64,000 nucleotides of DNA from Rebecca billardiae RCC1528 (Eukaryota > Protista > Haptophyta): assembly GCA_965240325.2 (NCBI GenBank), contig OZ251239.1:310001-374000 (forward strand), read 5' to 3'. This document shows positions 6,848 to 63,470 of the stretch, one piece after another. The first letter of the stretch is position 1, and each line of letters starts with the position of its first letter. The notes under the pieces are model-generated. The model was not told the DNA's origin. It saw only the letters and a program-made list of their open reading frames with translations, and searched no databases. Position numbers and translations under genes: made by a program.

Positions 6848-9269
6848 CCGTGGCATGCTGCCGGGGGGTCCATCAGATTAAATTGAGTTTTGATTTTCTT
6901 TTCTTTTCCATTCAGAACTTGTTCGGCGGGTTTTCGCGATCGGCAGATTCCAAATCCGCGCTCGGCTGGCCCCGGCGCGGGAGCGGAGCTCTGAACGGGG
7001 TCGGCAAGGCTGATGGCCCTCGTCGACGGCCGTCGCTCGCCATTGGGCGCACCCACCTCGGTGCAGGCGCCTCGTCAAGCGGCTGGGCGGCTGCGGACGG
7101 GTAGCCATGACTCGTGCGGACCGGGCTCTCGCTGGGAGTCGTGGTTCAACCGAAGCTCGTGCTTCATAATTTGCATCTGCGTGCTCAACGTGTGCTGCTC
7201 GCGACCAAGGAGCGAGTCCTAGCAGCACGTGCTGGCGACCTACGCGGAGACGAACATGACCTACGCGGTGGGGTGGACATCGACAACGACTCGACGCAGC
7301 CTTCTCGCTCACCCGACACCGCGCTCTCGTGCTCAGACTCTCCCCCGACGCCTCGGCCGCAAGGAGCGCTCGACGCCGACCAACTTGCGGGCCGCCGCGC
7401 CGGGCATGACGAGGTCCAGGGCGTGGCGGATGATGATGTGCGCGTGTCCATGGACATGTGCGACCCGCCCGAGGTCCCCGCCAGCACCGCAGAGGGGCTC
7501 ACCTCCTCCGCGGACGGCCACGATGGCGTGCAGCAGTCAAGGCTCGAGCTGCCGCCAGACATCAACGTCCGCGTGGAGCAGGTCGAGGAGACGGCGGCGG
7601 CGGCGCGCGCCATTCACGTGATGCACACTTTTGGCTGCCGCTTCGTGGCCGGCACGCACCCGCGGTACGCATCGGTGCTCAACTTCGTGCTCCTCGACCT
7701 CCTCCGCACGCTCGTGGACCTCATGCTCGAGAAGAACTTGAGGAAGCGCAAGCAGTTGGTCAGAGTGTTCACCGCGGCGTACGCCCAGACCGCGGGCGAC
7801 GGTGGGATGAGGAAGCCCAAGAAGGTCGCGCACGCCTGCGCGGACGTGCACGGCATCTCGGCGCGCCACGACTCGCCGCGGCTCGAGATGATCGGCAACT
7901 GGCTGATGACCGTGCACAGGTGGTCGAAGGGCAAGCGCCAGGACGTGGAGCGCATCCTGAGCCGGAAGCTGGGCGCGTCGGCGGCGGAGAGGTTGGCGGA
8001 GCTGGACACCGACGACCAGTTGCTGGGCGCCGCCCACGTCAGCTGCCCCTTCCGCGACCTCGACTCGCACCCCGACGCTGACGCGCCGCGCATTTCCGCA
8101 TCAGGCCGCGTGACGGTGCCGCTGCACGAGCAGCGCGTGACTCCTGCTGAGCACGCGATCATCTCGGAGCAGCAGGTGGAGCTGGACTCGTCGCGCAAGG
8201 CGACCGCGCGCGCCGTCGCCGACGCTGCGCGCGCCAGCTTGCGCGCCGACGAAGCCGAGCGCAGCGCGTGCTGTGGCACAGATCGCGCTGCGGCCGAGCG
8301 GGCGGCCATGGCTGCCGACGGCGCCGAGCTCAAGCGCGAGAGGAGAGCGGCGGAGCTTCGGGGCGAGCGCGTGGCGAAGCGCGCGCAGTCCGTCGCAGTA
8401 GTGGTGAACCGGTGGCAGCCTCGCGTGGGCCGGGGTACGACGAACGGCGACGATGCCGGTGACACAGAGTACGGGCTTGGAAGTCGCCGAACGGACCGCG
8501 GCAAGCTTGGCGGCGGCAATCGACTGCCAGTCTGCGCACGCAAGCCTCGACGGCGGAGCCGGAGGGCTCTCCTGCGAGTGTTGGGATGGTGGCATGCTCA
8601 GAGGTGGTCTTGCTAGTGTGCCTTGGCACGCAGCCCGCCGCCCGCATCAGGCCCGTGCGGGCCTGCTGCGGCACTGTTCGAGTGGCATGAGCAGCCGCAG
8701 TGACTGCTCCGCGGCGGCGGCCGCCTATTCGGATGACCCAGTCTCAATATTGAACACGGTACCCACATATAGGCACCAATATGAATATATATAGGAGAGT
8801 GCACCCGTATTATATATAAACGGGTAAGTCTGTGCGTATGTGTGGGTAGGGGATCTCTAATTAAATGGGTAAAATGCTCGATCTTGGAGTAGTTTTTCAC
8901 CGACCGCTACGCGCACTCATCATGCCTACTAAAATTTAGCAATTCCACCTTAATTTTGTTGGGGCGGGTTGCAACGGTTATGAATAAGTAAGTCCGACGA
9001 CATACCGTCATTTAGCCGCCATAACAAGTCCTTGACGTTTGGCTGAATCTGTATGTGACACAGTGGCGCAGCTGGCGTGCGCGCACGACCGCGCGACGGC
9101 GCGCGGAGTCGGTTTTGAGTGCTTCCAACGGCTGGGCTGGGCTCTGGGACATATTTGTAAGTGCCTCCGCAAGCGCCACGCTCGTCAGACACCTAAATCG
9201 CATGGTTGAAGAAAATCACAAATCAATGGGCTGCTGTCATGGACCCCCTACTGATGCTGCATGCAACGG
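6848..9269. mobile_element. possible degenerate TIR transposon
   Basis: CCGTGGCATGCTGC..GGGGGTCCAT..ATTGA..TGATTTTCTT at 6848-6900 matches the reverse complement of ~9208-9269 imperfectly; encloses an orphan ORF; no TSD seen. Confidence 0.4.
7114..8616 (+). CDS. orphan protein, possibly element-borne; start uncertain
   Basis: 500-codon ORF with coding-like GC3 usage in 7450-8400 and a C-terminal coiled-coil-like A/R/E stretch; no motif recognised. Confidence 0.4.
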   Translation: MRTGLSLGVVVQPKLVLHNLHLRAQRVLLATKERVLAARAGDLRGDEHDLRGGVDIDNDSTQPSRSPDTALSCSDSPPTPRPQGALDADQLAGRRAGHDEVQGVADDDVRVSMDMCDPPEVPASTAEGLTSSADGHDGVQQSRLELPPDINVRVEQVEETAAAARAIHVMHTFGCRFVAGTHPRYASVLNFVLLDLLRTLVDLMLEKNLRKRKQLVRVFTAAYAQTAGDGGMRKPKKVAHACADVHGISARHDSPRLEMIGNWLMTVHRWSKGKRQDVERILSRKLGASAAERLAELDTDDQLLGAAHVSCPFRDLDSHPDADAPRISASGRVTVPLHEQRVTPAEHAIISEQQVELDSSRKATARAVADAARASLRADEAERSACCGTDRAAAERAAMAADGAELKRERRAAELRGERVAKRAQSVAVVVNRWQPRVGRGTTNGDDAGDTEYGLGSRRTDRGKLGGGNRLPVCARKPRRRSRRALLRVLGWWHAQRWSC

Positions 9270-57410: not shown

Positions 57411-57839
57411 ATGAGCTACCTGCTGCCGCACCTCAACTCGGGGTGGGCCGTGGACCAGGCCATCCTCTCCGAGGAGGACCGCGTGGTCGTCATCCGCTTC
57501 GGCCACGACTACGACCCCGTGTGCATGCGGATGGACGAGACGCTCTACTCGATCGCGGAGCTCGTGAAGAACTACGCCGTGGTGTACCTCGTGGATATCA
57601 CGCAGGTGCCCGATTTCAATTCGATGTACGAGCTCTACGATCCGTGCACGGTGATGTTCTTCTTCCGCAACAAGCACATCATGATCGACCTTGGCACAGG
57701 CAACAACAACAAGATCAACTGGGCGCTGACCGACAAGCAGGAGATGATCGACATTATTGAGACGATATATCGTGGCGCGCGGAAAGGGCGTGGTCTGGTG
57801 GTCAGCCCGAAGGACTACTCCACCAAGTACAGGTACTAG
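57411..57839 (+). CDS. DIM1: U5 snRNP thioredoxin-like protein Dim1/TXNL4A
   Basis: 142 aa from MSYLLPHL..VDQAILSEEDRVVVIRFGHD to GRGLVVSPKDYSTKYRY, a highly conserved sequence. Confidence 0.99.
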   Translation: MSYLLPHLNSGWAVDQAILSEEDRVVVIRFGHDYDPVCMRMDETLYSIAELVKNYAVVYLVDITQVPDFNSMYELYDPCTVMFFFRNKHIMIDLGTGNNNKINWALTDKQEMIDIIETIYRGARKGRGLVVSPKDYSTKYRY

Positions 57840-59337
57840 GGCCAGCTGTGGCCTTGCAGTGCACGGCTAGCGGCGCAGGACCGCAGCCGAGACTCTCAGG
57901 GGTCTGGCGCCGCAAGTCTTAGGGAGCCTGGTCTCGCGGTTCAAGGATGATGCGCCGTCAGCTTCAGTATTGATCTGCCGTCTGTGCCTGACACTGCTGC
58001 ACCGCGTGATCTTGAGATCGTCCAGGACGACACGCTTCTTGTCCATGCGGCACGCGGGCTGATAGTGTACGGTGACCGTGTCATAATCATTCGCCTCACG
58101 CCCTGCCCCTGGCCACGGTGCGCCGGGCCGCCGGGCGGGCCGGCCGGCGGTCTGCCAGTCCGACTCACTGACCGCGTCTGCGACCGTGCGGTCCGGCAGC
58201 GGACAGACACACGCCGGTCTGCACGGACATGAATGACAGACAGTCCGTAGCCTCGCGGTAAGCAGTGGCGACTCGCGGTCCGCCCGCGGCCGCGCGGCCG
58301 ATCACGGACACGATGACGATGCCCGCCGATTCGCCCGAGTTGCGCACTTGCGGATTGGCGATTGCCCGCCTGCCCGGAGTCGGCCGCCGGCGGACTCGGA
58401 TTGGTACTGCTGGGACAGGCAGCGCAACGACGACTCGGTCTGTCGGCAACTAACTAACTAGCTAGATCACTGGCACCGACAGTGGCGCTGGCCGGGATCT
58501 AGCACGCCGGTCATGCCGCAGCGGCGTCAGTGCAGTGATCTAGACGGTGCGATTCTGGTGCAAATAGCGAGATCACCTTGGAGATCGTGTATCTCCCCTA
58601 CTAATGTTGCCGAGATCGCGACGAGATTGAGGTCGTATATCTCCAGTATGTGACATTTTTTCGCATGAACTTGTCAGCGTGACCCCAGCTCGTTTCAGGC
58701 GAATATTGACATCCCGAAGTTTGAGAGCCTCATCTCAAGACGACAGGAAGTTGGATTTTGGGCCACGCACCCCCCAGTGGGGCTCTGACCCCTCTACTGA
58801 GTCAGTGCTGACTGACTGCTCGGCTAGCTAGTATTCTTTGAGAATTGAGTCCGGGCCCGCGACATCCGTTATCCGTCCCGGGTCGGGCCTCAGACCCAGT
58901 CACAGTGCGGCAGTGCCCTCAGGGACTCAGGCTCAAAGTGACCCGCCAGTCGGTCGGGCAGTCGGACTCCGCGACTACTCAGACTAGTCCGAGCGGCCGC
59001 CCTTCGGCTTCAGTCGCCGTCGGCGGCGGCGGGCCCGCCGCCGCGGCTCAGACAGGAGTGGGCCCAAGACAGCAACTGCAACGGGCAGGCGGACTGTAAC
59101 CAGCGTTCGCATTGCCAGCTGTACTGCTGCGCGGTGTGACAGGGCTCAGCACGGCCCGGATGGCCGCGTGCGCGTGGGCCTGCATCCATCCGTGACAGCT
59201 GGTCGCAATCAAAGTGACCAGGCAGCACGACCATCCGAGATATCCAGCTGCGACCCCAGCCAGCGCAGAGCCTGGCCTGCGCTGCTGGGTGCCTGCCTTC
59301 CTCCTGCGCGTGTGCGTGCGCGCGCGCGAGCGCCCGC

Positions 59338-59760
59338 CTACTTCCGCCACGTGTTGGTCAGGTCAGGCATGCGGAACTCCTGCGTGATCTCGAGATCGTC
59401 CAGGACGACGCGCTTCTTGTCCACGTCGTAGCGGCACTCGACGTAGCCCGAGAGCGGGAAGTCCTTGCGGAACGGGTGGTCCTTCATGCCGTAGTCCGTG
59501 AGGATGCGCCGCAAGTCCGGGTGGTCGCGGAAGAGGATGCCGTACAAGTCGTAGATCTCGCGCTCGAGCCAGTTGCACCCCTGGTACACGGAAGTGAGCG
59601 ATGGCAGAACCTCGTCCTCGGAGTGCAGCGCCTTGAGGCGCAGCCGCGTGTGGTACTTGACCGAGCGCAGTTCATAGTGCGTCTCGTACCACCGTGCGCC
59701 CTTTGACGCCTCCACCGCGCTCGTGCTGCTCAGCGCGCGCCGCGCGATGCGGCCGAGCAT
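59338..59760 (-). CDS. NDUFS3: complex I 30-kDa subunit (Nad9/NDUFS3), C-terminal portion only, with a mitochondrial-type presequence
   Basis: WLEREIYDLYG..HPDLRRILTDYG..HPFRKDFPLSGYVECRYD..QEFR; preceded only by MLGRIARRALSSTS. Confidence 0.9.
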   Translation of the reverse strand: MLGRIARRALSSTSAVEASKGARWYETHYELRSVKYHTRLRLKALHSEDEVLPSLTSVYQGCNWLEREIYDLYGILFRDHPDLRRILTDYGMKDHPFRKDFPLSGYVECRYDVDKKRVVLDDLEITQEFRMPDLTNTWRK

Positions 59761-60395
59761 GGCGCCCCAGTGAGCCGTCGACACCACTTGCGGCGCTTCG
59801 GCCTTGCGAGAAGCCGCTGGCGGAATCAGCATGGCGGCGCCCAAATATGGCAATTGCCAATACCCGTAGATGATAGTGAATCCCCGCCTGAGGCTTGAGT
59901 TGAGAGTGATCAGACGCAGTTTCGTGTTGCAAGTCTTCTAGATGTAACTACAGTTTACTAATCGAATAAGAGACGCAGACAGCTCAGGCAGTATGAGTAG
60001 GCATGCACTGATGCAGTTCTAGCTGACACTGACTGATCGACTAAGCCGGTCACTAGAGTACCGACGCAGCCGCGACGTCGCGGACACTCGGCGGCGCAGC
60101 ACGGCGGCAGCAGCATGTTCCAGCCCGTTCCAGGCCGGCGCGATCGACCGCTATCACCTCGGCGACGCCCGCGCCAACGGGCACGGCATGACGCATGTTG
60201 CATGCAAGACACCAAGTTGCAAGTCTTCACTTGCAAGACGTGACCCGCGGGGCCGCGGTCGTCGGACAGCCGTCGCCATCGCGCCACGCGTCGTGAATCC
60301 GTCATGGCATCGAGCGCCGTCGTGGCCGCACCTGCAAGTACCCTCTCGAAGCGGCGCTCTGGTGCCGATGACGAACGTCACGTTCACCGTTACGT

Positions 60396-61826
60396 TCACT
60401 CCTTGAGGACGAGCTTGGCGAGGTCGCGCGCGATCGCGTCGGTTGCGTCTGGCCGCGCGGCCGCCTGCGCGCGCACCTCCATCGCGCGCAGCGCGGCCTC
60501 GTCGGCGAGCCAGCCGGCGACGGTCTCGCCGATCTGCGCAGGCGACGACTTGAACACGCCAAACCCGGCCTCCTCCACGAAGTCGACGTTGCCCGCCTCC
60601 TGCCCGGGCAGGAACGAGGAGAGAACGGTGGGCAGGCCCATGGCCGCCGCCTCGGCAATCGTTCCGGGGCCCGCCTTCGAGACCATCGCGTCCGCCGCGG
60701 CCATGTAGCGCTCCATGTCGGAGACGAAGCCGACGGCGCGCACGCCCACGCCGGCGGGCCAGCTCGCGGCCTCGAGCTGCGCGCGCGCCGCCTCGTTGCG
60801 CCCGCATACCACCACCATCTGGGCGCCTCCTGGCACGCGCGCGAGCGCGGCGCCTGTCGCTGTTGCCACGTCTGCCAGGCCGCCCATCCCGTCACCTCCG
60901 CCGACGACGAGCACGGTGGGCAGCTCGGGGGAGAGCTCGAGGGCGGCGCGCACCTTGGCACGCTCGCCCACCCCCGTGCGCCCGCCCGCAAACGCCGGGC
61001 GGATGGGCAGCCCATGCTGCACAAGCTGAGGGGCGAGGCGCGCGCGCGGCGAGGCGCGGCCACGCAAGGCGGGGGAGGGTGCGTGCGCGGCGCGGCGGCG
61101 GCGCGCGGCGCGTGAGTGCTCGCACGGCGCGGGCGCGGCGGCGCGCGCGCGGTGCGCGCGCGCGCGCACCTGCCCGTCGCGCAGCCCCGCGTCCTTCGCG
61201 AGCTTGCGCAGCGCGTCGCTCGGCACGAAGCACGCGTCCACCTCTCGGTGGAACCAGGTGGGGTGGGCTGAGCCGAGGTCCGTGACGACGGTGGCGAACG
61301 GCGTGGTGCGCGTGCCGCCGTCGAGGCGCGCGAGCGCGCGCAGGGGCGCGCCTTGGAGGAGCGGGTGCACCGAGACCACGCAGTCGGGCCGCGGCGACGC
61401 GCCGATCAGCTCCTCGCACGCGCGGCCGAGCGCGATCTCGGTCGAAATCTCGTGCAGGCACTGGCCGGGCGGCGACCCGCCCGCCTCGAAGACCGCCGCC
61501 CAGAGGGGCGGGTTCGCGGCGAGCCATTTGTACAGGTCAGGGAATCCGCTGTACGGCGGCACGCCCGACTCGACGAACACGTCGACCAGGTCGCACTCCA
61601 CGCGGCCCGGGTACAGACCCTCGAGGGCACCCTTGAGCGCGAGCGCCGATGCGCGGTGCCCGCCGCCCGTGTCCGAGAAGAGGAAGCGCACGCGCTTGGC
61701 GGCGGAGGCGGCGGCGTAGAGCGCGGCGCGCGGCGTGGTGGCGCGCGCTCGCACAGAGGACGCCACCCGCGCGCCCTCGCACGCGCCGAGGAGCAGCAGC
61801 GCGACCGGCCAGACACGAGCCGCCAT
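60396..61826 (-). CDS. MGD: monogalactosyldiacylglycerol synthase (GT28); intron 61026-61169
   Basis: SDTGGGHRASA, VSVHPLLQ, FATVVTDL, GLPIRPAF, VGGGDGMG, KAGPGTIAEA, PGQEAGNV; signal peptide. Confidence 0.95.
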   Translation of the reverse strand: MAARVWPVALLLLGACEGARVASSVRARATTPRAALYAAASAAKRVRFLFSDTGGGHRASALALKGALEGLYPGRVECDLVDVFVESGVPPYSGFPDLYKWLAANPPLWAAVFEAGGSPPGQCLHEISTEIALGRACEELIGASPRPDCVVSVHPLLQGAPLRALARLDGGTRTTPFATVVTDLGSAHPTWFHREVDACFVPSDALRKLAKDAGLRDGQVRARAHRARAAAPAPCEHSRAARRRRAAHAPSPALRGRASPRARLAPQLVQHGLPIRPAFAGGRTGVGERAKVRAALELSPELPTVLVVGGGDGMGGLADVATATGAALARVPGGAQMVVVCGRNEAARAQLEAASWPAGVGVRAVGFVSDMERYMAAADAMVSKAGPGTIAEAAAMGLPTVLSSFLPGQEAGNVDFVEEAGFGVFKSSPAQIGETVAGWLADEAALRAMEVRAQAAARPDATDAIARDLAKLVLKE

Positions 61827-61898: not shown

Positions 61899-63470
61899 CA
61901 AGGGAGGTCCGGGCCGGGAGCTCCCAGCGAGCGGCCAGCGCGACCAGGGCTCAAAGATCCGGTGCTCGGTACGCGTACCGGTGCACCGGCGCCGCAGGCG
62001 CCGGTGTACCGGTACACCGGTGCGCGCACCGCGGGGGGGTCCGGGGGGGTGTCCCCCCCGGGGCCCCGCCGGCCCGAGGCGAAGAAAATTTTTGGGCCTA
62101 TTTACTGATATAAATAGCCCAATTATTCAGGACGAAATCGGCCGGCGTATTCGCCTTCCCTGAGTCGGGGCACGGCCTGAGAGTGCCAGCAGTGACTACT
62201 CAGTCTCAGTACTCCGACCTCGGACACTGACAAGTGACAGCTCCGCGAGTAGTCCGTACTCGCGGGTGCTGTGGTCCGGGCGCACACGACCCCTCCCGGA
62301 CTCTCACCGGTGCGCGGCAGTTTGTGGCGGTGCGTACCGGTACGCACCGGTACGCACCGGTACGGTATTTACCGGTGTCCGGTGTACCGTCTTGGAGCCC
62401 TGAGCGCGACATCACCTCAAGGTTTTTTCCTGAGCGCCGGGCGGCAGCGGCGGCGAGGGCGGTGCTCCGCTGGCGGGGCGCGCACGGGGCACGGCGCTGC
62501 GGGCGCGGATGTGCCCGCAGAGCCGGCGCGTGCGGACGGGCTGTTGCGGGAGAGCATCTGGCGCCCTCCTGCGCCGCGCGCATTGCGCCACGCCTCTTTC
62601 GCCTTGACTCAGGGCAGCGCGCACATGCGCGCCGCGTCAAGGCCAGCCTTGCCGCGCCGCAGCCGACCGCGCGCGCGCCGTGCGCGGCGTGGTCGGGAAG
62701 GAACGGGCGTGGCTGCCGGGCGAGATGGCGACATCACGTGCGCACGCCATGCCGCCCCGCCACGCCTTGACGAGCGTGTCGCCGGTCCGTTTGCACGCCT
62801 CTTCGAGTTGTCTCAAATGGTCTGCACGGCCTCGCGGTCGCGACCCTTGTCGGGACGATCATTGAGACACAGAACAGTGCCAGACGGGCACGCGGACTAC
62901 TCTTACATGAATGTCCATCACCACGTGGCCATGTAGAAGTGCTGGGTGCGACGCTTTCCTCGCGCTGATACACTTTCATCATCTTTTTCGAGCTCAGGTC
63001 TGGCTTCAGGCACGGCAAGAAATCAGCACTCGTCAACAGCTGTGCGGATCCGTTATCGCGCCCTTTCGCGGCGCCGCGGGACGACATGGCGTGCGCACGT
63101 GATGTCGCCATCTCGCCCGGCAGCCGCGCCCGTTCCTTCCCGACCACGCCGCGCACGGCGCGCGTGCGGTCGGCTGCGGCGCGGCAAGGCTGGCCTTGAC
63201 GCAGCGCGCATGTGCGCGCTGCCCTGAGTCAAGGCGAAAGAGGCGTGGCGCAATGCGCGCGGCGCAGGAGGGCGCCAGATGCTCTCCCGCAACAGCCCGT
63301 CCGCACGCGCCGGCTCTGCGGACACATCCGCGCCCGCAGCGCCGTGCCCCGTGCGCGCCCCGCCAGCGGAGCACCGCCCTCGCCGCCGCTGCCGCCCGGC
63401 GCTCAGGAAAAACCTTGAGGTGATGTCGCGCTGGCCGCTCGCTGGGAGCTCCCGGCCCGGACCTCCCTTG
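61899..63470. mobile_element. long-TIR non-autonomous element, CAAGG..CCTTG ends, 7-bp TSD (P/Galileo-like)
   Basis: TSD GTTTGGG at 61892-61898 and 63471-63477; arms 61899-61944 plus 62403-~62752 match ~63080-63470 inverted. Confidence 0.85.
61945..62402. mobile_element. hAT-type MITE nested in the left TIR of the previous element
   Basis: TIR CAGGGCTCAAAGA / TCTTGGAGCCCTG; 8-bp TSD AGCGCGAC at 61937-61944 and 62403-62410; subterminal ACCGGT repeats; empty site in the opposite arm. Confidence 0.92.

What the first reader, a model, noticed from the sequence alone, without database searches (positions are those of the whole stretch)
59338..59760. Nuclear half-Nad9 with its own presequence: candidate split complex I subunit
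Seen: an intact 140-aa ORF whose Nad9/NDUFS3 similarity starts only at the strand equivalent to RFEVVYNLLS (here RWYETHYELRS). It is preceded directly by MLGRIARRALSSTS, an Arg-rich, acid-free presequence-like peptide. Codons are GC3-rich like the neighbouring nuclear genes, and I see no Nad9-like exon between it and the MGD stop. Known: full Nad9 has roughly 70 further N-terminal residues including the D..VD motif, and split respiratory subunits exist elsewhere (COX2 in chlorophycean algae and apicomplexans, SDHB in Euglenozoa). Inference: Nad9 may work here as two polypeptides, with the N-part encoded by another nuclear gene or retained in mtDNA. The conserved DYGFEGHP is changed to DYGMKDHP, suggesting co-adaptation or a new role.
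Basis: partly seen in the sequence, partly recalled or inferred. Interest (0 to 1): 0.8.

Follow-up and report, generated by a model that had tools for sequence, protein, structure and literature searches.

The report
Shortened complex I Nad9 in pavlovophytes
This alga and its whole class (pavlovophyte haptophytes) keep a conserved nuclear gene for the respiratory complex I core subunit Nad9/NDUFS3 that lacks the first ~55 residues of the protein and has a short import signal instead; whether the missing piece is made by another gene is not known.

Summary
A 140-aa minus-strand ORF (59338-59760) is a strong Nad9/NDUFS3 match (Pfam PF00329, 106 bits). The match covers only model positions 24-123, behind a basic, almost acid-free leader.

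The short form is not a local accident. All closest relatives are 143-166 aa and, where named, pavlovophyte (Diacronema lutheri, Pavlovales CCMP2436); unnamed contigs and one transcriptome ORF are assigned to the clade by similarity and tree. Gene models are single-exon. Each has the same kind of leader with an R-x-[L/M]-[S/C] motif.

The core is under purifying selection (dN/dS 0.08-0.24). The leader evolves freely.

Prymnesiophytes (Emiliania, Prymnesium, Coccolithus) have full-length nuclear Nad9 of 192-194 aa. Published pavlovophyte mtDNAs lack nad9.

No N-terminal Nad9 coding was found in the window or in 12 related loci. Close upstream stops and close upstream genes leave no room for a spliced exon.

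About 55 residues are missing (two helices and two strands; a third strand survives only as a remnant), so roughly 70% of the protein remains, not half.

The "two polypeptides" idea could not be tested. My searches for a free N-module were too insensitive to count. I lean to loss with compensation (about 0.5) over a true split (about 0.3).

This is a new variant of a known subunit. I found no report of it in four searches of the held paper library.

The parts
59338..59760 (-). Coding sequence of the short Nad9/NDUFS3: 140 aa plus the stop at 59338-59340, in a single exon.
   Evidence: ORF list and translation. Pfam PF00329 at 106 bits. PDB NDUFS3 matches at E about 1e-40. Orthologues are 73-76% identical.
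59731..59760 (-). Predicted mitochondrial presequence MLGRIARRAL. The inferred processing site follows R-A-L, leaving S-S at the new N-terminus (R-3 type motif).
   Evidence: Translation. All 15 pavlovophyte sequences checked have a basic leader that is acid-free up to the motif, with R-x-[L/M]-[S/C] at the same aligned place. In the leader pN is about equal to pS. The cleavage itself is inferred and was not tested.
59761..59832 (-). Optional in-frame 24-codon extension from an upstream ATG at 59832, giving the 164-aa gene call P0001.
   Evidence: This extension is not conserved in sequence among relatives.
59341..59691 (-). Nad9-homologous core, residues 24-140. It comprises the beta4-beta5 hairpin, helix alpha3 and the C-terminal segment carrying HPDLRRILTDYG, RKDFPLSGY, RYD..KKRVV and QEFR.
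   Evidence: HMM positions 56-186. 48 of 67 columns that are at least 85% conserved in full-length Nad9 are kept. dN/dS is 0.08-0.24.
59473..59496 (-). DYGMKDHP, the clade-specific version of the otherwise invariant DYGFxGHP.
   Evidence: Translation. F92 and G94 are 100% conserved in 101 full-length sequences and are M/T and D in all 11 pavlovophyte sequences.
59761..60395 (-). Spacer between the MGD stop codon and the Nad9 start. It contains no Nad9-like coding.
   Evidence: Three-frame translation. HMM search with filters off and E up to 10 gives no hit.
60396..61826 (-). Upstream neighbour on the same strand: MGDG synthase.
   Evidence: ORF. The gene on locus L001 carries Pfam MGDG_synth and Glyco_tran_28_C.
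57411..57839 (+). Downstream convergent neighbour: DIM1 (142 aa). The Nad9-DIM1 tail-to-tail pairing is shared with D. lutheri and with locus L006.
   Evidence: Translation. Pfam DIM1 is found next to Nad9 in L004 and L006.

Best explanation
This ORF is most likely the working, and probably the only, gene for complex I core subunit Nad9/NDUFS3 in this pavlovophyte haptophyte.

Shown: it is nuclear, with GC3 of 0.94 and flanking nuclear genes. It is single-exon and conserved across Pavlovophyceae under purifying selection. It lacks the N-terminal module that AlphaFold models with high confidence in Emiliania: helix 5-16, strands 21-27 and 30-35, and helix 37-49. Strand 57-63 survives only as a short remnant.

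Inferred mechanism: the roughly 10-residue basic leader directs import into mitochondria and is cleaved after R-A-L. The mature protein of about 130 aa joins the Q-module through its intact C-terminal two-thirds, which in solved structures wraps around NDUFS2.

Inferred origin: a nuclear transfer separate from the one in prymnesiophytes. Rappephyceae still carry nad9 in mtDNA, and the prymnesiophyte nuclear gene is full length. The transfer either carried only the 3' part of the gene or lost its 5' part when the presequence was acquired.

My lean: the missing surface module is no longer made. The complex adapted to its absence through a burst of substitutions on the stem branch and, probably, through accessory subunits covering the exposed face.
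For: Family and extent of the match.

Short form across the clade: 143-166 aa in Diacronema lutheri, Pavlovales CCMP2436, an MMETSP transcript ORF and several Logan/JGI contigs, at 73-76% identity.

Gene structure: single exon in loci L004-L011. L012 has one 72-nt GT..AG intron inside the core. In-frame stops lie 11 codons before the ATG in D. lutheri and 13 in CCMP2436. The upstream DUF1499 gene ends only 109-203 nt before the ATG in L006-L011.

No N-terminal Nad9 signal in the window or in 12 loci.

Selection: core dN/dS is 0.08-0.24, and in the leader pN is about equal to pS. The leader motif is present in all 15 sequences checked.

Comparison with prymnesiophytes: about 67 clusters of mostly full-length nuclear Nad9 (typically 192-194 aa), and no pavlovophyte full-length copy in the top 120 hits.

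mtDNA: nad9 is absent from Pavlovales mtDNA and, among haptophytes, present only in Pavlomulina (PMC9551565; PMC8283788). Pavlovales mtDNAs do encode nad1-6 and nad4L, so complex I is retained.

Tree: the pavlovophyte clade has 100/100 support, with a stem branch of 1.77 against tip branches of 0.02-0.37.

Substitutions: 19 clade-wide changes at conserved columns, including buried-type L32 to R and R24 to W.

Structure prediction: Emiliania residues 1-60 have block-mean pLDDT of 88-97. The short form alone has mean pLDDT 57.7 and pTM 0.33.

Precedent: accessory subunits compensate for shortened NDUFS3 elements, and NDUFA7 clamps the N-terminal helix of NDUFS3 (PMC8762328).
Against: There is no RNA or protein evidence for this organism; no RNA run was listed. 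Import, cleavage and incorporation into complex I are all inferred.

The missing module makes up more than half of one compact alpha/beta domain. The remaining hairpin is strongly conserved yet models poorly on its own, which would also fit a partner supplied in trans.

A free N-module was looked for only with tools that need shared 5-residue words or that look only near the gene. Its absence is therefore not shown. Absence of a second, full-length copy rests on top-120 lists from capped searches.
Confidence: 0.5

Rival explanations
1. True split subunit. The N-terminal module (about 55 aa: helix, two strands, helix) is made from a separate gene, nuclear with its own presequence or a small unannotated mtDNA ORF. 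It reassembles with this C-terminal piece inside complex I, as in split COX2 or SDHB.
For: The deleted part is a structurally coherent module that is predicted with very high confidence in Emiliania. The retained half-domain is conserved but models poorly alone. An independent and possibly partial transfer from mtDNA is plausible, because Rappephyceae still have mt nad9. The long stem branch could reflect co-adaptation of two pieces.
Against: No candidate was found in the window, in 12 related loci, among proteins of 36-115 aa sharing words with the Emiliania N-module, or in the ESM Atlas look-up. All of these are weak tests. The annotated Pavlovales mtDNAs have only standard genes: the 20 CDS of D. 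viridis leave no spare ORF, and orf105 of D. lutheri is not conserved. L32 to R and other polar replacements in strand beta4 look more like exposure to solvent.
Confidence: 0.3
2. An ordinary full-length Nad9 whose N-terminal part lies on an upstream exon that is spliced on. The ATG at 59760 would then be internal.
For: Weak similarity continues a few residues into the leader. In this window the frame stays open for 59 codons upstream of the ATG. Introns do occur in this gene family, as in L012.
Against: No N-terminal Nad9 signal appears in any frame of the window or of 12 loci. Stops lie 11 to 13 codons upstream in D. lutheri and CCMP2436. The neighbouring gene ends 109 nt upstream in L006. 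The D. lutheri model comes from an RNA-seq-guided annotation pipeline (BRAKER2; PMC8379373), and the MMETSP transcript ORF P0131 starts at the same leader. The leader itself carries a conserved processing-type motif.
Confidence: 0.04
3. A truncated paralogue with a different role, or a decaying copy, while a canonical full-length Nad9 elsewhere serves complex I.
For: Invariant residues are changed (F92, G94, R24). Both database searches were capped at 8000 candidates and list only the best 120, so a second copy could have been missed.
Against: Purifying selection and class-wide conservation rule out decay. 48 of 67 conserved columns are kept, including the whole NDUFS2-binding C-terminal segment. 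No pavlovophyte full-length protein appears between the prymnesiophyte block and fungi in the Emiliania-seeded search, although the D. lutheri and CCMP2436 proteomes are in that database. mtDNA lacks nad9.
Confidence: 0.08

Closest known systems
Canonical Nad9 / NDUFS3 / NuoC (Pfam PF00329), for example Emiliania huxleyi nuclear NDUFS3 (194 aa) and Arabidopsis Nad9 (190 aa, PDB 7a23 chain F)
   Same: The family is the same (106 bits). The C-terminal two-thirds is the same, with the motifs HPDLRRILTDYG, RKDFPL.GY, RYD..KRVV and QEFR. There is 50-57% identity over the shared part.
   Different: The first ~55 residues are missing (helix, two strands, helix), and a short basic leader stands in their place. 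There are 19 clade-fixed replacements at otherwise conserved columns, including DYGFxGHP changed to DYG[M/T]KDHP.
Split respiratory subunits: COX2a/COX2b of chlorophycean algae and apicomplexans, SDHB-n/SDHB-c of Euglenozoa, and the split nad2 and rps3 genes of ciliate mtDNA (nad2/rps3: PMC3318907 abstract; the others are recalled from general knowledge)
   Same: This is a gene encoding only the C-terminal portion of a normally single polypeptide, and it begins with its own targeting signal.
   Different: In those cases both pieces are known. Here only one piece has been found, so membership in this class is unproven.
Structural elements of NDUFS3 that are shortened in mitochondria and compensated by accessory subunits (NDUFA5, NDUFA7), as reviewed in PMC8762328
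   Same: The principle is the same: peripheral elements of this core subunit can be lost and their contacts taken over by other subunits.
   Different: Those cases involve loops of a few residues. Here a whole sub-domain of about 55 residues is gone, including the N-terminal helix that NDUFA7 normally clamps.

Membership tests
Nad9/NDUFS3/NuoC (Complex1_30kDa, PF00329) | Significant match to the family profile above the curated cut-off | tested here: met
   106.4 bits against a cut-off of 22.5. PDB NDUFS3 chains match at E about 1e-40.
Nad9/NDUFS3/NuoC (Complex1_30kDa, PF00329) | Conserved C-terminal motifs that contact NDUFS2 (HPDLRRILTDYG, RKDFPLSGY, RYD..KRVV, QEFR) | tested here: met
   48 of 67 columns that are at least 85% conserved are retained. 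The contact role itself is taken from published structures and was not computed here.
Nad9/NDUFS3/NuoC (Complex1_30kDa, PF00329) | Complete N-terminal alpha/beta domain (helix, two strands, helix, then three further strands and a helix) | tested here: not met
   Only profile positions 24-123 of 124 match, and only HMM positions 56-186. The elements H5-16, E21-27, E30-35 and H37-49 of the Emiliania model have no counterpart.
Nad9/NDUFS3/NuoC (Complex1_30kDa, PF00329) | Physical presence in mitochondrial complex I | not testable with these tools
   Requires complexome mass spectrometry or cryo-EM. Pavlovales mtDNAs encode nad1-6 and nad4L, so a complex I exists.
Naturally split respiratory subunit (COX2a/b or SDHB-n/c type) | A second gene encoding the complementary N-terminal piece | tested here: inconclusive
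   None was found in the window or 12 loci, in a word-limited database search or in the Atlas look-up. All of these would miss a strongly diverged piece located elsewhere in the genome.
Naturally split respiratory subunit (COX2a/b or SDHB-n/c type) | The C-terminal piece is an independent, conserved gene with its own start and targeting signal | tested here: met
Nuclear gene for a mitochondrial protein with a cleavable presequence | Basic, acid-poor N-terminal leader with an R-2/R-3 processing motif; the leader is variable in sequence but conserved in character | tested here: met
   15 of 15 sequences have R-x-[L/M]-[S/C], 3-8 R+K residues, and 0-2 D+E residues, none before the motif except in the two extended gene calls. 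In the leader pN is about equal to pS. No targeting predictor was available, and import was not tested.

The most novel reading that the evidence does not exclude
Nad9/NDUFS3 of pavlovophyte haptophytes is a genuinely split core subunit. The roughly 55-residue N-terminal module would be encoded by a separate, highly diverged gene (nuclear, or a small overlooked mtDNA ORF) and would reassemble with this piece in the Q-module. To my knowledge that would be the first split NDUFS3, arising from a partial mitochondrion-to-nucleus transfer independent of the one in prymnesiophytes.
Probability: 0.3. Interest if true: 0.75.

Novelty: new variant of a known kind. Interest (0 to 1): 0.52.

Why it matters
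NDUFS3/NuoC is one of the 14 core subunits of complex I. In the roughly 100 full-length homologues compared here, from bacteria to animals, the N-terminal domain was present. A whole algal class that has lived for a long time with about 30% of the protein removed shows that part of this "core" fold is dispensable or replaceable.

It also offers a natural experiment on what the NDUFS3 N-module does, for example as a docking site for NDUFA7 and NDUFA5 or in early Q-module assembly. Together with the mtDNA-encoded nad9 of Rappephyceae and the full-length nuclear gene of prymnesiophytes, it gives a three-state series within one phylum for studying how mitochondrial genes move to the nucleus. If the missing module proves to be encoded separately, it would add a new example to the short list of split respiratory-chain subunits.

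Diacronema lutheri is cultivable and has a genome sequence, so the question can be tested directly.

Tried and rejected
- RNA evidence: the look-up of sequencing runs listed no RNA run for this stretch, so read laying could not be used. Expression in this species is untested.
- Logan contigs L001-L003 first looked like possible transcripts, because L001 skips 1.57 kb of the window. The skipped piece has 46-bp perfect terminal inverted repeats and a 7-bp target duplication, so it is a transposon insertion polymorphism in DNA contigs, not an intron.
- Search for a free N-module with Emiliania residues 1-66 found only five Isochrysidales fragments. The tool needs shared 5-residue words, so this blank says little.
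- The ESM Atlas look-up of the N-module gave only sub-threshold bacterial clusters.
- I did not run the one exhaustive HMMER job. It lists only the best 150 hits, which would all be canonical full-length NuoC/Nad9, so it could not reveal a diverged free N-module.
- The DUF1499 gene directly upstream in several relatives was considered as a carrier of the missing module. It shows no Nad9 signal and has no homologue in this window.
- The 42-nt copy of the Nad9 3' end at 58004-58045 was checked as a possible second copy or exon. It is an isolated fragment.
- Other short Nad9 entries in the database (P0094, P0104, P0107) have canonical motifs and an AT-rich residue make-up. They look like mis-called or partial mitochondrial genes, not relatives of this form. 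This was not followed up.

Full report
**What is at the coordinates.** The minus strand of 59338-59760 carries an intact ORF of 140 codons plus a stop.
- It matches Pfam Complex1_30kDa (PF00329) at E 1.8e-30 and 106 bits against a curated cut-off of 22.5. The match covers only profile positions 24-123 of 124.
- Against solved structures it aligns at E about 1e-40 to residues 67-198 of the 208-aa NDUFS3 chain 7zd6_5 and to residues 62-185 of the 190-aa Arabidopsis Nad9.
- GC3 is 0.94 in a window of 67% GC.
- A second in-frame ATG at 59832 would add 24 residues (gene call P0001). That extension is not conserved in relatives.

**Corrections to the observation.**
- Weak similarity begins before RWYETHYE. 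The residues AVE, which are A[ILV]D in most relatives, align with the canonical AVD, and the Asp that is invariant in full-length proteins is kept in 8 of 11 pavlovophyte sequences.
- The missing part corresponds to Emiliania residues 1 to about 55, not about 70 residues. The gene encodes roughly 70% of a Nad9, not half.

**The short form characterises a whole clade.**
- The seven best database hits are all short (145-163 aa) and 60-76% identical. With further cluster members the short forms span 143-166 aa. They include Diacronema lutheri KFE25_008268, Pavlovales sp. CCMP2436 and an MMETSP transcript ORF.
- These short sequences form a 100/100 clade. The window's sequence is sister to the rest of that clade. 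The window therefore comes from a pavlovophyte haptophyte.
- A search seeded with Emiliania huxleyi NDUFS3 returns about 67 prymnesiophyte clusters (Coccolithus, Chrysotila, Prymnesium and others). The complete ones are typically 192-194 aa. Fungal and other sequences follow, and no pavlovophyte full-length protein appears in the top 120.
- Published comparisons state that nad9 is absent from all Pavlovales and prymnesiophyte mtDNAs. Among haptophytes it is present only in Pavlomulina, class Rappephyceae (PMC9551565; PMC8283788).
- Those papers report both possible placements of Rappephyceae. Under either one, independent nuclear transfers in the two classes are the simpler reading. This is an inference.

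**No upstream exon.**
- An HMM built from 101 full-length Nad9 sequences was run with filters off and E up to 10 against all six frames of the window and of 12 related loci. It hits only the known gene, from HMM position 54-61 onward in the intron-less loci.
- The gene is a single exon in D. lutheri, CCMP2436 and three further lineages. One lineage (L012) has a 72-nt GT..AG intron inside the core.
- In-frame stops lie 11 codons before the start codon in D. lutheri and 13 in CCMP2436. In L006-L011 an unrelated DUF1499 gene ends only 109-203 nt upstream.
- The D. lutheri genome was annotated with BRAKER2 using RNA-seq, and 45% of its genes are single-exon (PMC8379373).
- Synteny supports orthology. 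DIM1 lies tail-to-tail with Nad9 here (57411-57839), in D. lutheri and in L006. An MGDG synthase gene is nearby in all of them.

**The gene is functional.**
- Pairwise dN/dS over the core is 0.08-0.24. In the leader pN is about equal to pS.
- All 15 pavlovophyte sequences examined have a basic leader that is acid-free up to an R-x-[L/M]-[S/C] motif at the same aligned position. This fits an R-3 processing site of the mitochondrial processing peptidase. Import and cleavage are inferred.
- Of 67 columns that are at least 85% conserved in full-length proteins and lie in the retained part, 48 are kept. These include the whole C-terminal segment.
- The other 19 columns are changed consistently in the clade: R24W, F25Y, L32R, N37H, W70Y, F92M/T, G94D, V107T, P122D, F132P, P137T and others.
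- The tree shows a very long stem branch (1.77 changes per column) followed by short branches within the clade. That pattern indicates one burst of remodelling followed by stasis.

**What is missing structurally.**
- AlphaFold2 on Emiliania NDUFS3 gives block-mean pLDDT of 88-97 for residues 1-60. The elements are helix 5-16, strands 21-27 and 30-35, helix 37-49 and strand 57-63.
- The pavlovophyte protein lacks the first four of these elements and keeps only a remnant of the fifth.
- With the same alignment, the short protein alone models poorly: mean pLDDT 57.7 and pTM 0.33. Only a hairpin (residues 25-33 and 38-46), a helix and the C-terminal strands are recognisable.
- According to a structural review, the N-terminal helix of NDUFS3 is clamped by NDUFA7, NDUFA5 sits on the NDUFS2/NDUFS3 interface, and accessory subunits compensate for shortened NDUFS3 loops (PMC8762328).

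**Split or lost?** I could not settle this.
- Nothing resembling the N-module was found near the gene, among small proteins sharing words with the Emiliania N-module or in the ESM Atlas.
- Given the divergence of the retained part, a free N-module would probably escape all of these searches.
- Annotated Pavlovales mtDNAs contain only standard genes. The one spare ORF, orf105 of D. lutheri, is not conserved in D. viridis. An ORF of about 60 codons could still have been overlooked.
- The coherence of the deleted module and the poor stand-alone model of the remnant argue for a partner supplied in trans.
- Polar replacements in strand beta4, such as L32R, and the precedent of accessory-subunit compensation argue for loss.
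- My estimate is about 0.5 for loss with compensation, 0.3 for a true split, under 0.05 for a hidden exon and under 0.1 for a paralogue alongside a full-length copy elsewhere.

**Novelty.** Four full-text searches turned up no description of a truncated or split Nad9 in haptophytes. The D. lutheri genome paper does not mention complex I. I classify this as a new variant of a known subunit.

**Limits.** No RNA run was listed for this organism, so no reads were laid. Both large protein searches were capped at 8000 candidates with 120 listed.

Noticed in passing
window 61899-63470: A 1.57-kb non-autonomous foldback/TIR element sits just upstream of the MGDG synthase ORF. It has 46-bp perfect terminal inverted repeats, an internal 364-bp inverted repeat and a 7-bp target-site duplication (CCCAAAC on the minus strand). 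It is present in this assembly but precisely absent from Logan contig L001 (ERR14847148), so it is an insertion polymorphism between haplotypes or strains.
   Followed up: partly
window 58004-58045: A 42-nt copy, 95% identical, of Nad9 codons 113-127 (59382-59423) lies in the DIM1-Nad9 spacer, in the same orientation. No further similarity extends around it. It may be filler DNA from a repair event, or a relic of the gene's former position closer to DIM1: the spacer is about 1.5 kb here against about 0.3 kb in relatives.
   Followed up: partly
window 58520-58831, compared with L001 3195-3302: About 310 nt of the DIM1-Nad9 spacer are replaced by an unrelated stretch of about 109 nt in contig L001. 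The next 370 nt are only 87% identical and contain many indels. This intergenic region is highly polymorphic.
   Followed up: no
L012 2061-2132 (Logan SRR30664515): The Nad9 orthologue of one pavlovophyte lineage has a 72-nt in-frame GT..AG intron between NWLE and REIY. The gene caller read through it, giving the 163-aa protein P0007; the true product would be 139 aa.
   Followed up: partly
L004, L006-L011, compared with the window: In other pavlovophytes a DUF1499 gene lies directly upstream of Nad9 on the same strand, with gaps of 109-203 nt in L006-L011, and MGDG synthase is on the opposite strand. In this window there is no DUF1499 homologue, and MGDG synthase is the direct upstream neighbour on the same strand. 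A local rearrangement has occurred.
   Followed up: partly
P0133 (Emiliania huxleyi XP_005765939) compared with P0008 (MMETSP transcript): The NCBI gene model has two extra residues (A-P) inside the RFE-V-MYQLLS strand relative to the transcript-derived protein. This is probably a mis-placed splice site in the gene model.
   Followed up: no
P0094, P0104 (Logan/ENA contigs): These are short (140-145 aa) Nad9 calls with canonical motifs and an AT-rich residue make-up. They are probably mitochondrial genes cut short by gene calling with the wrong genetic code, not real truncations.
   Followed up: no
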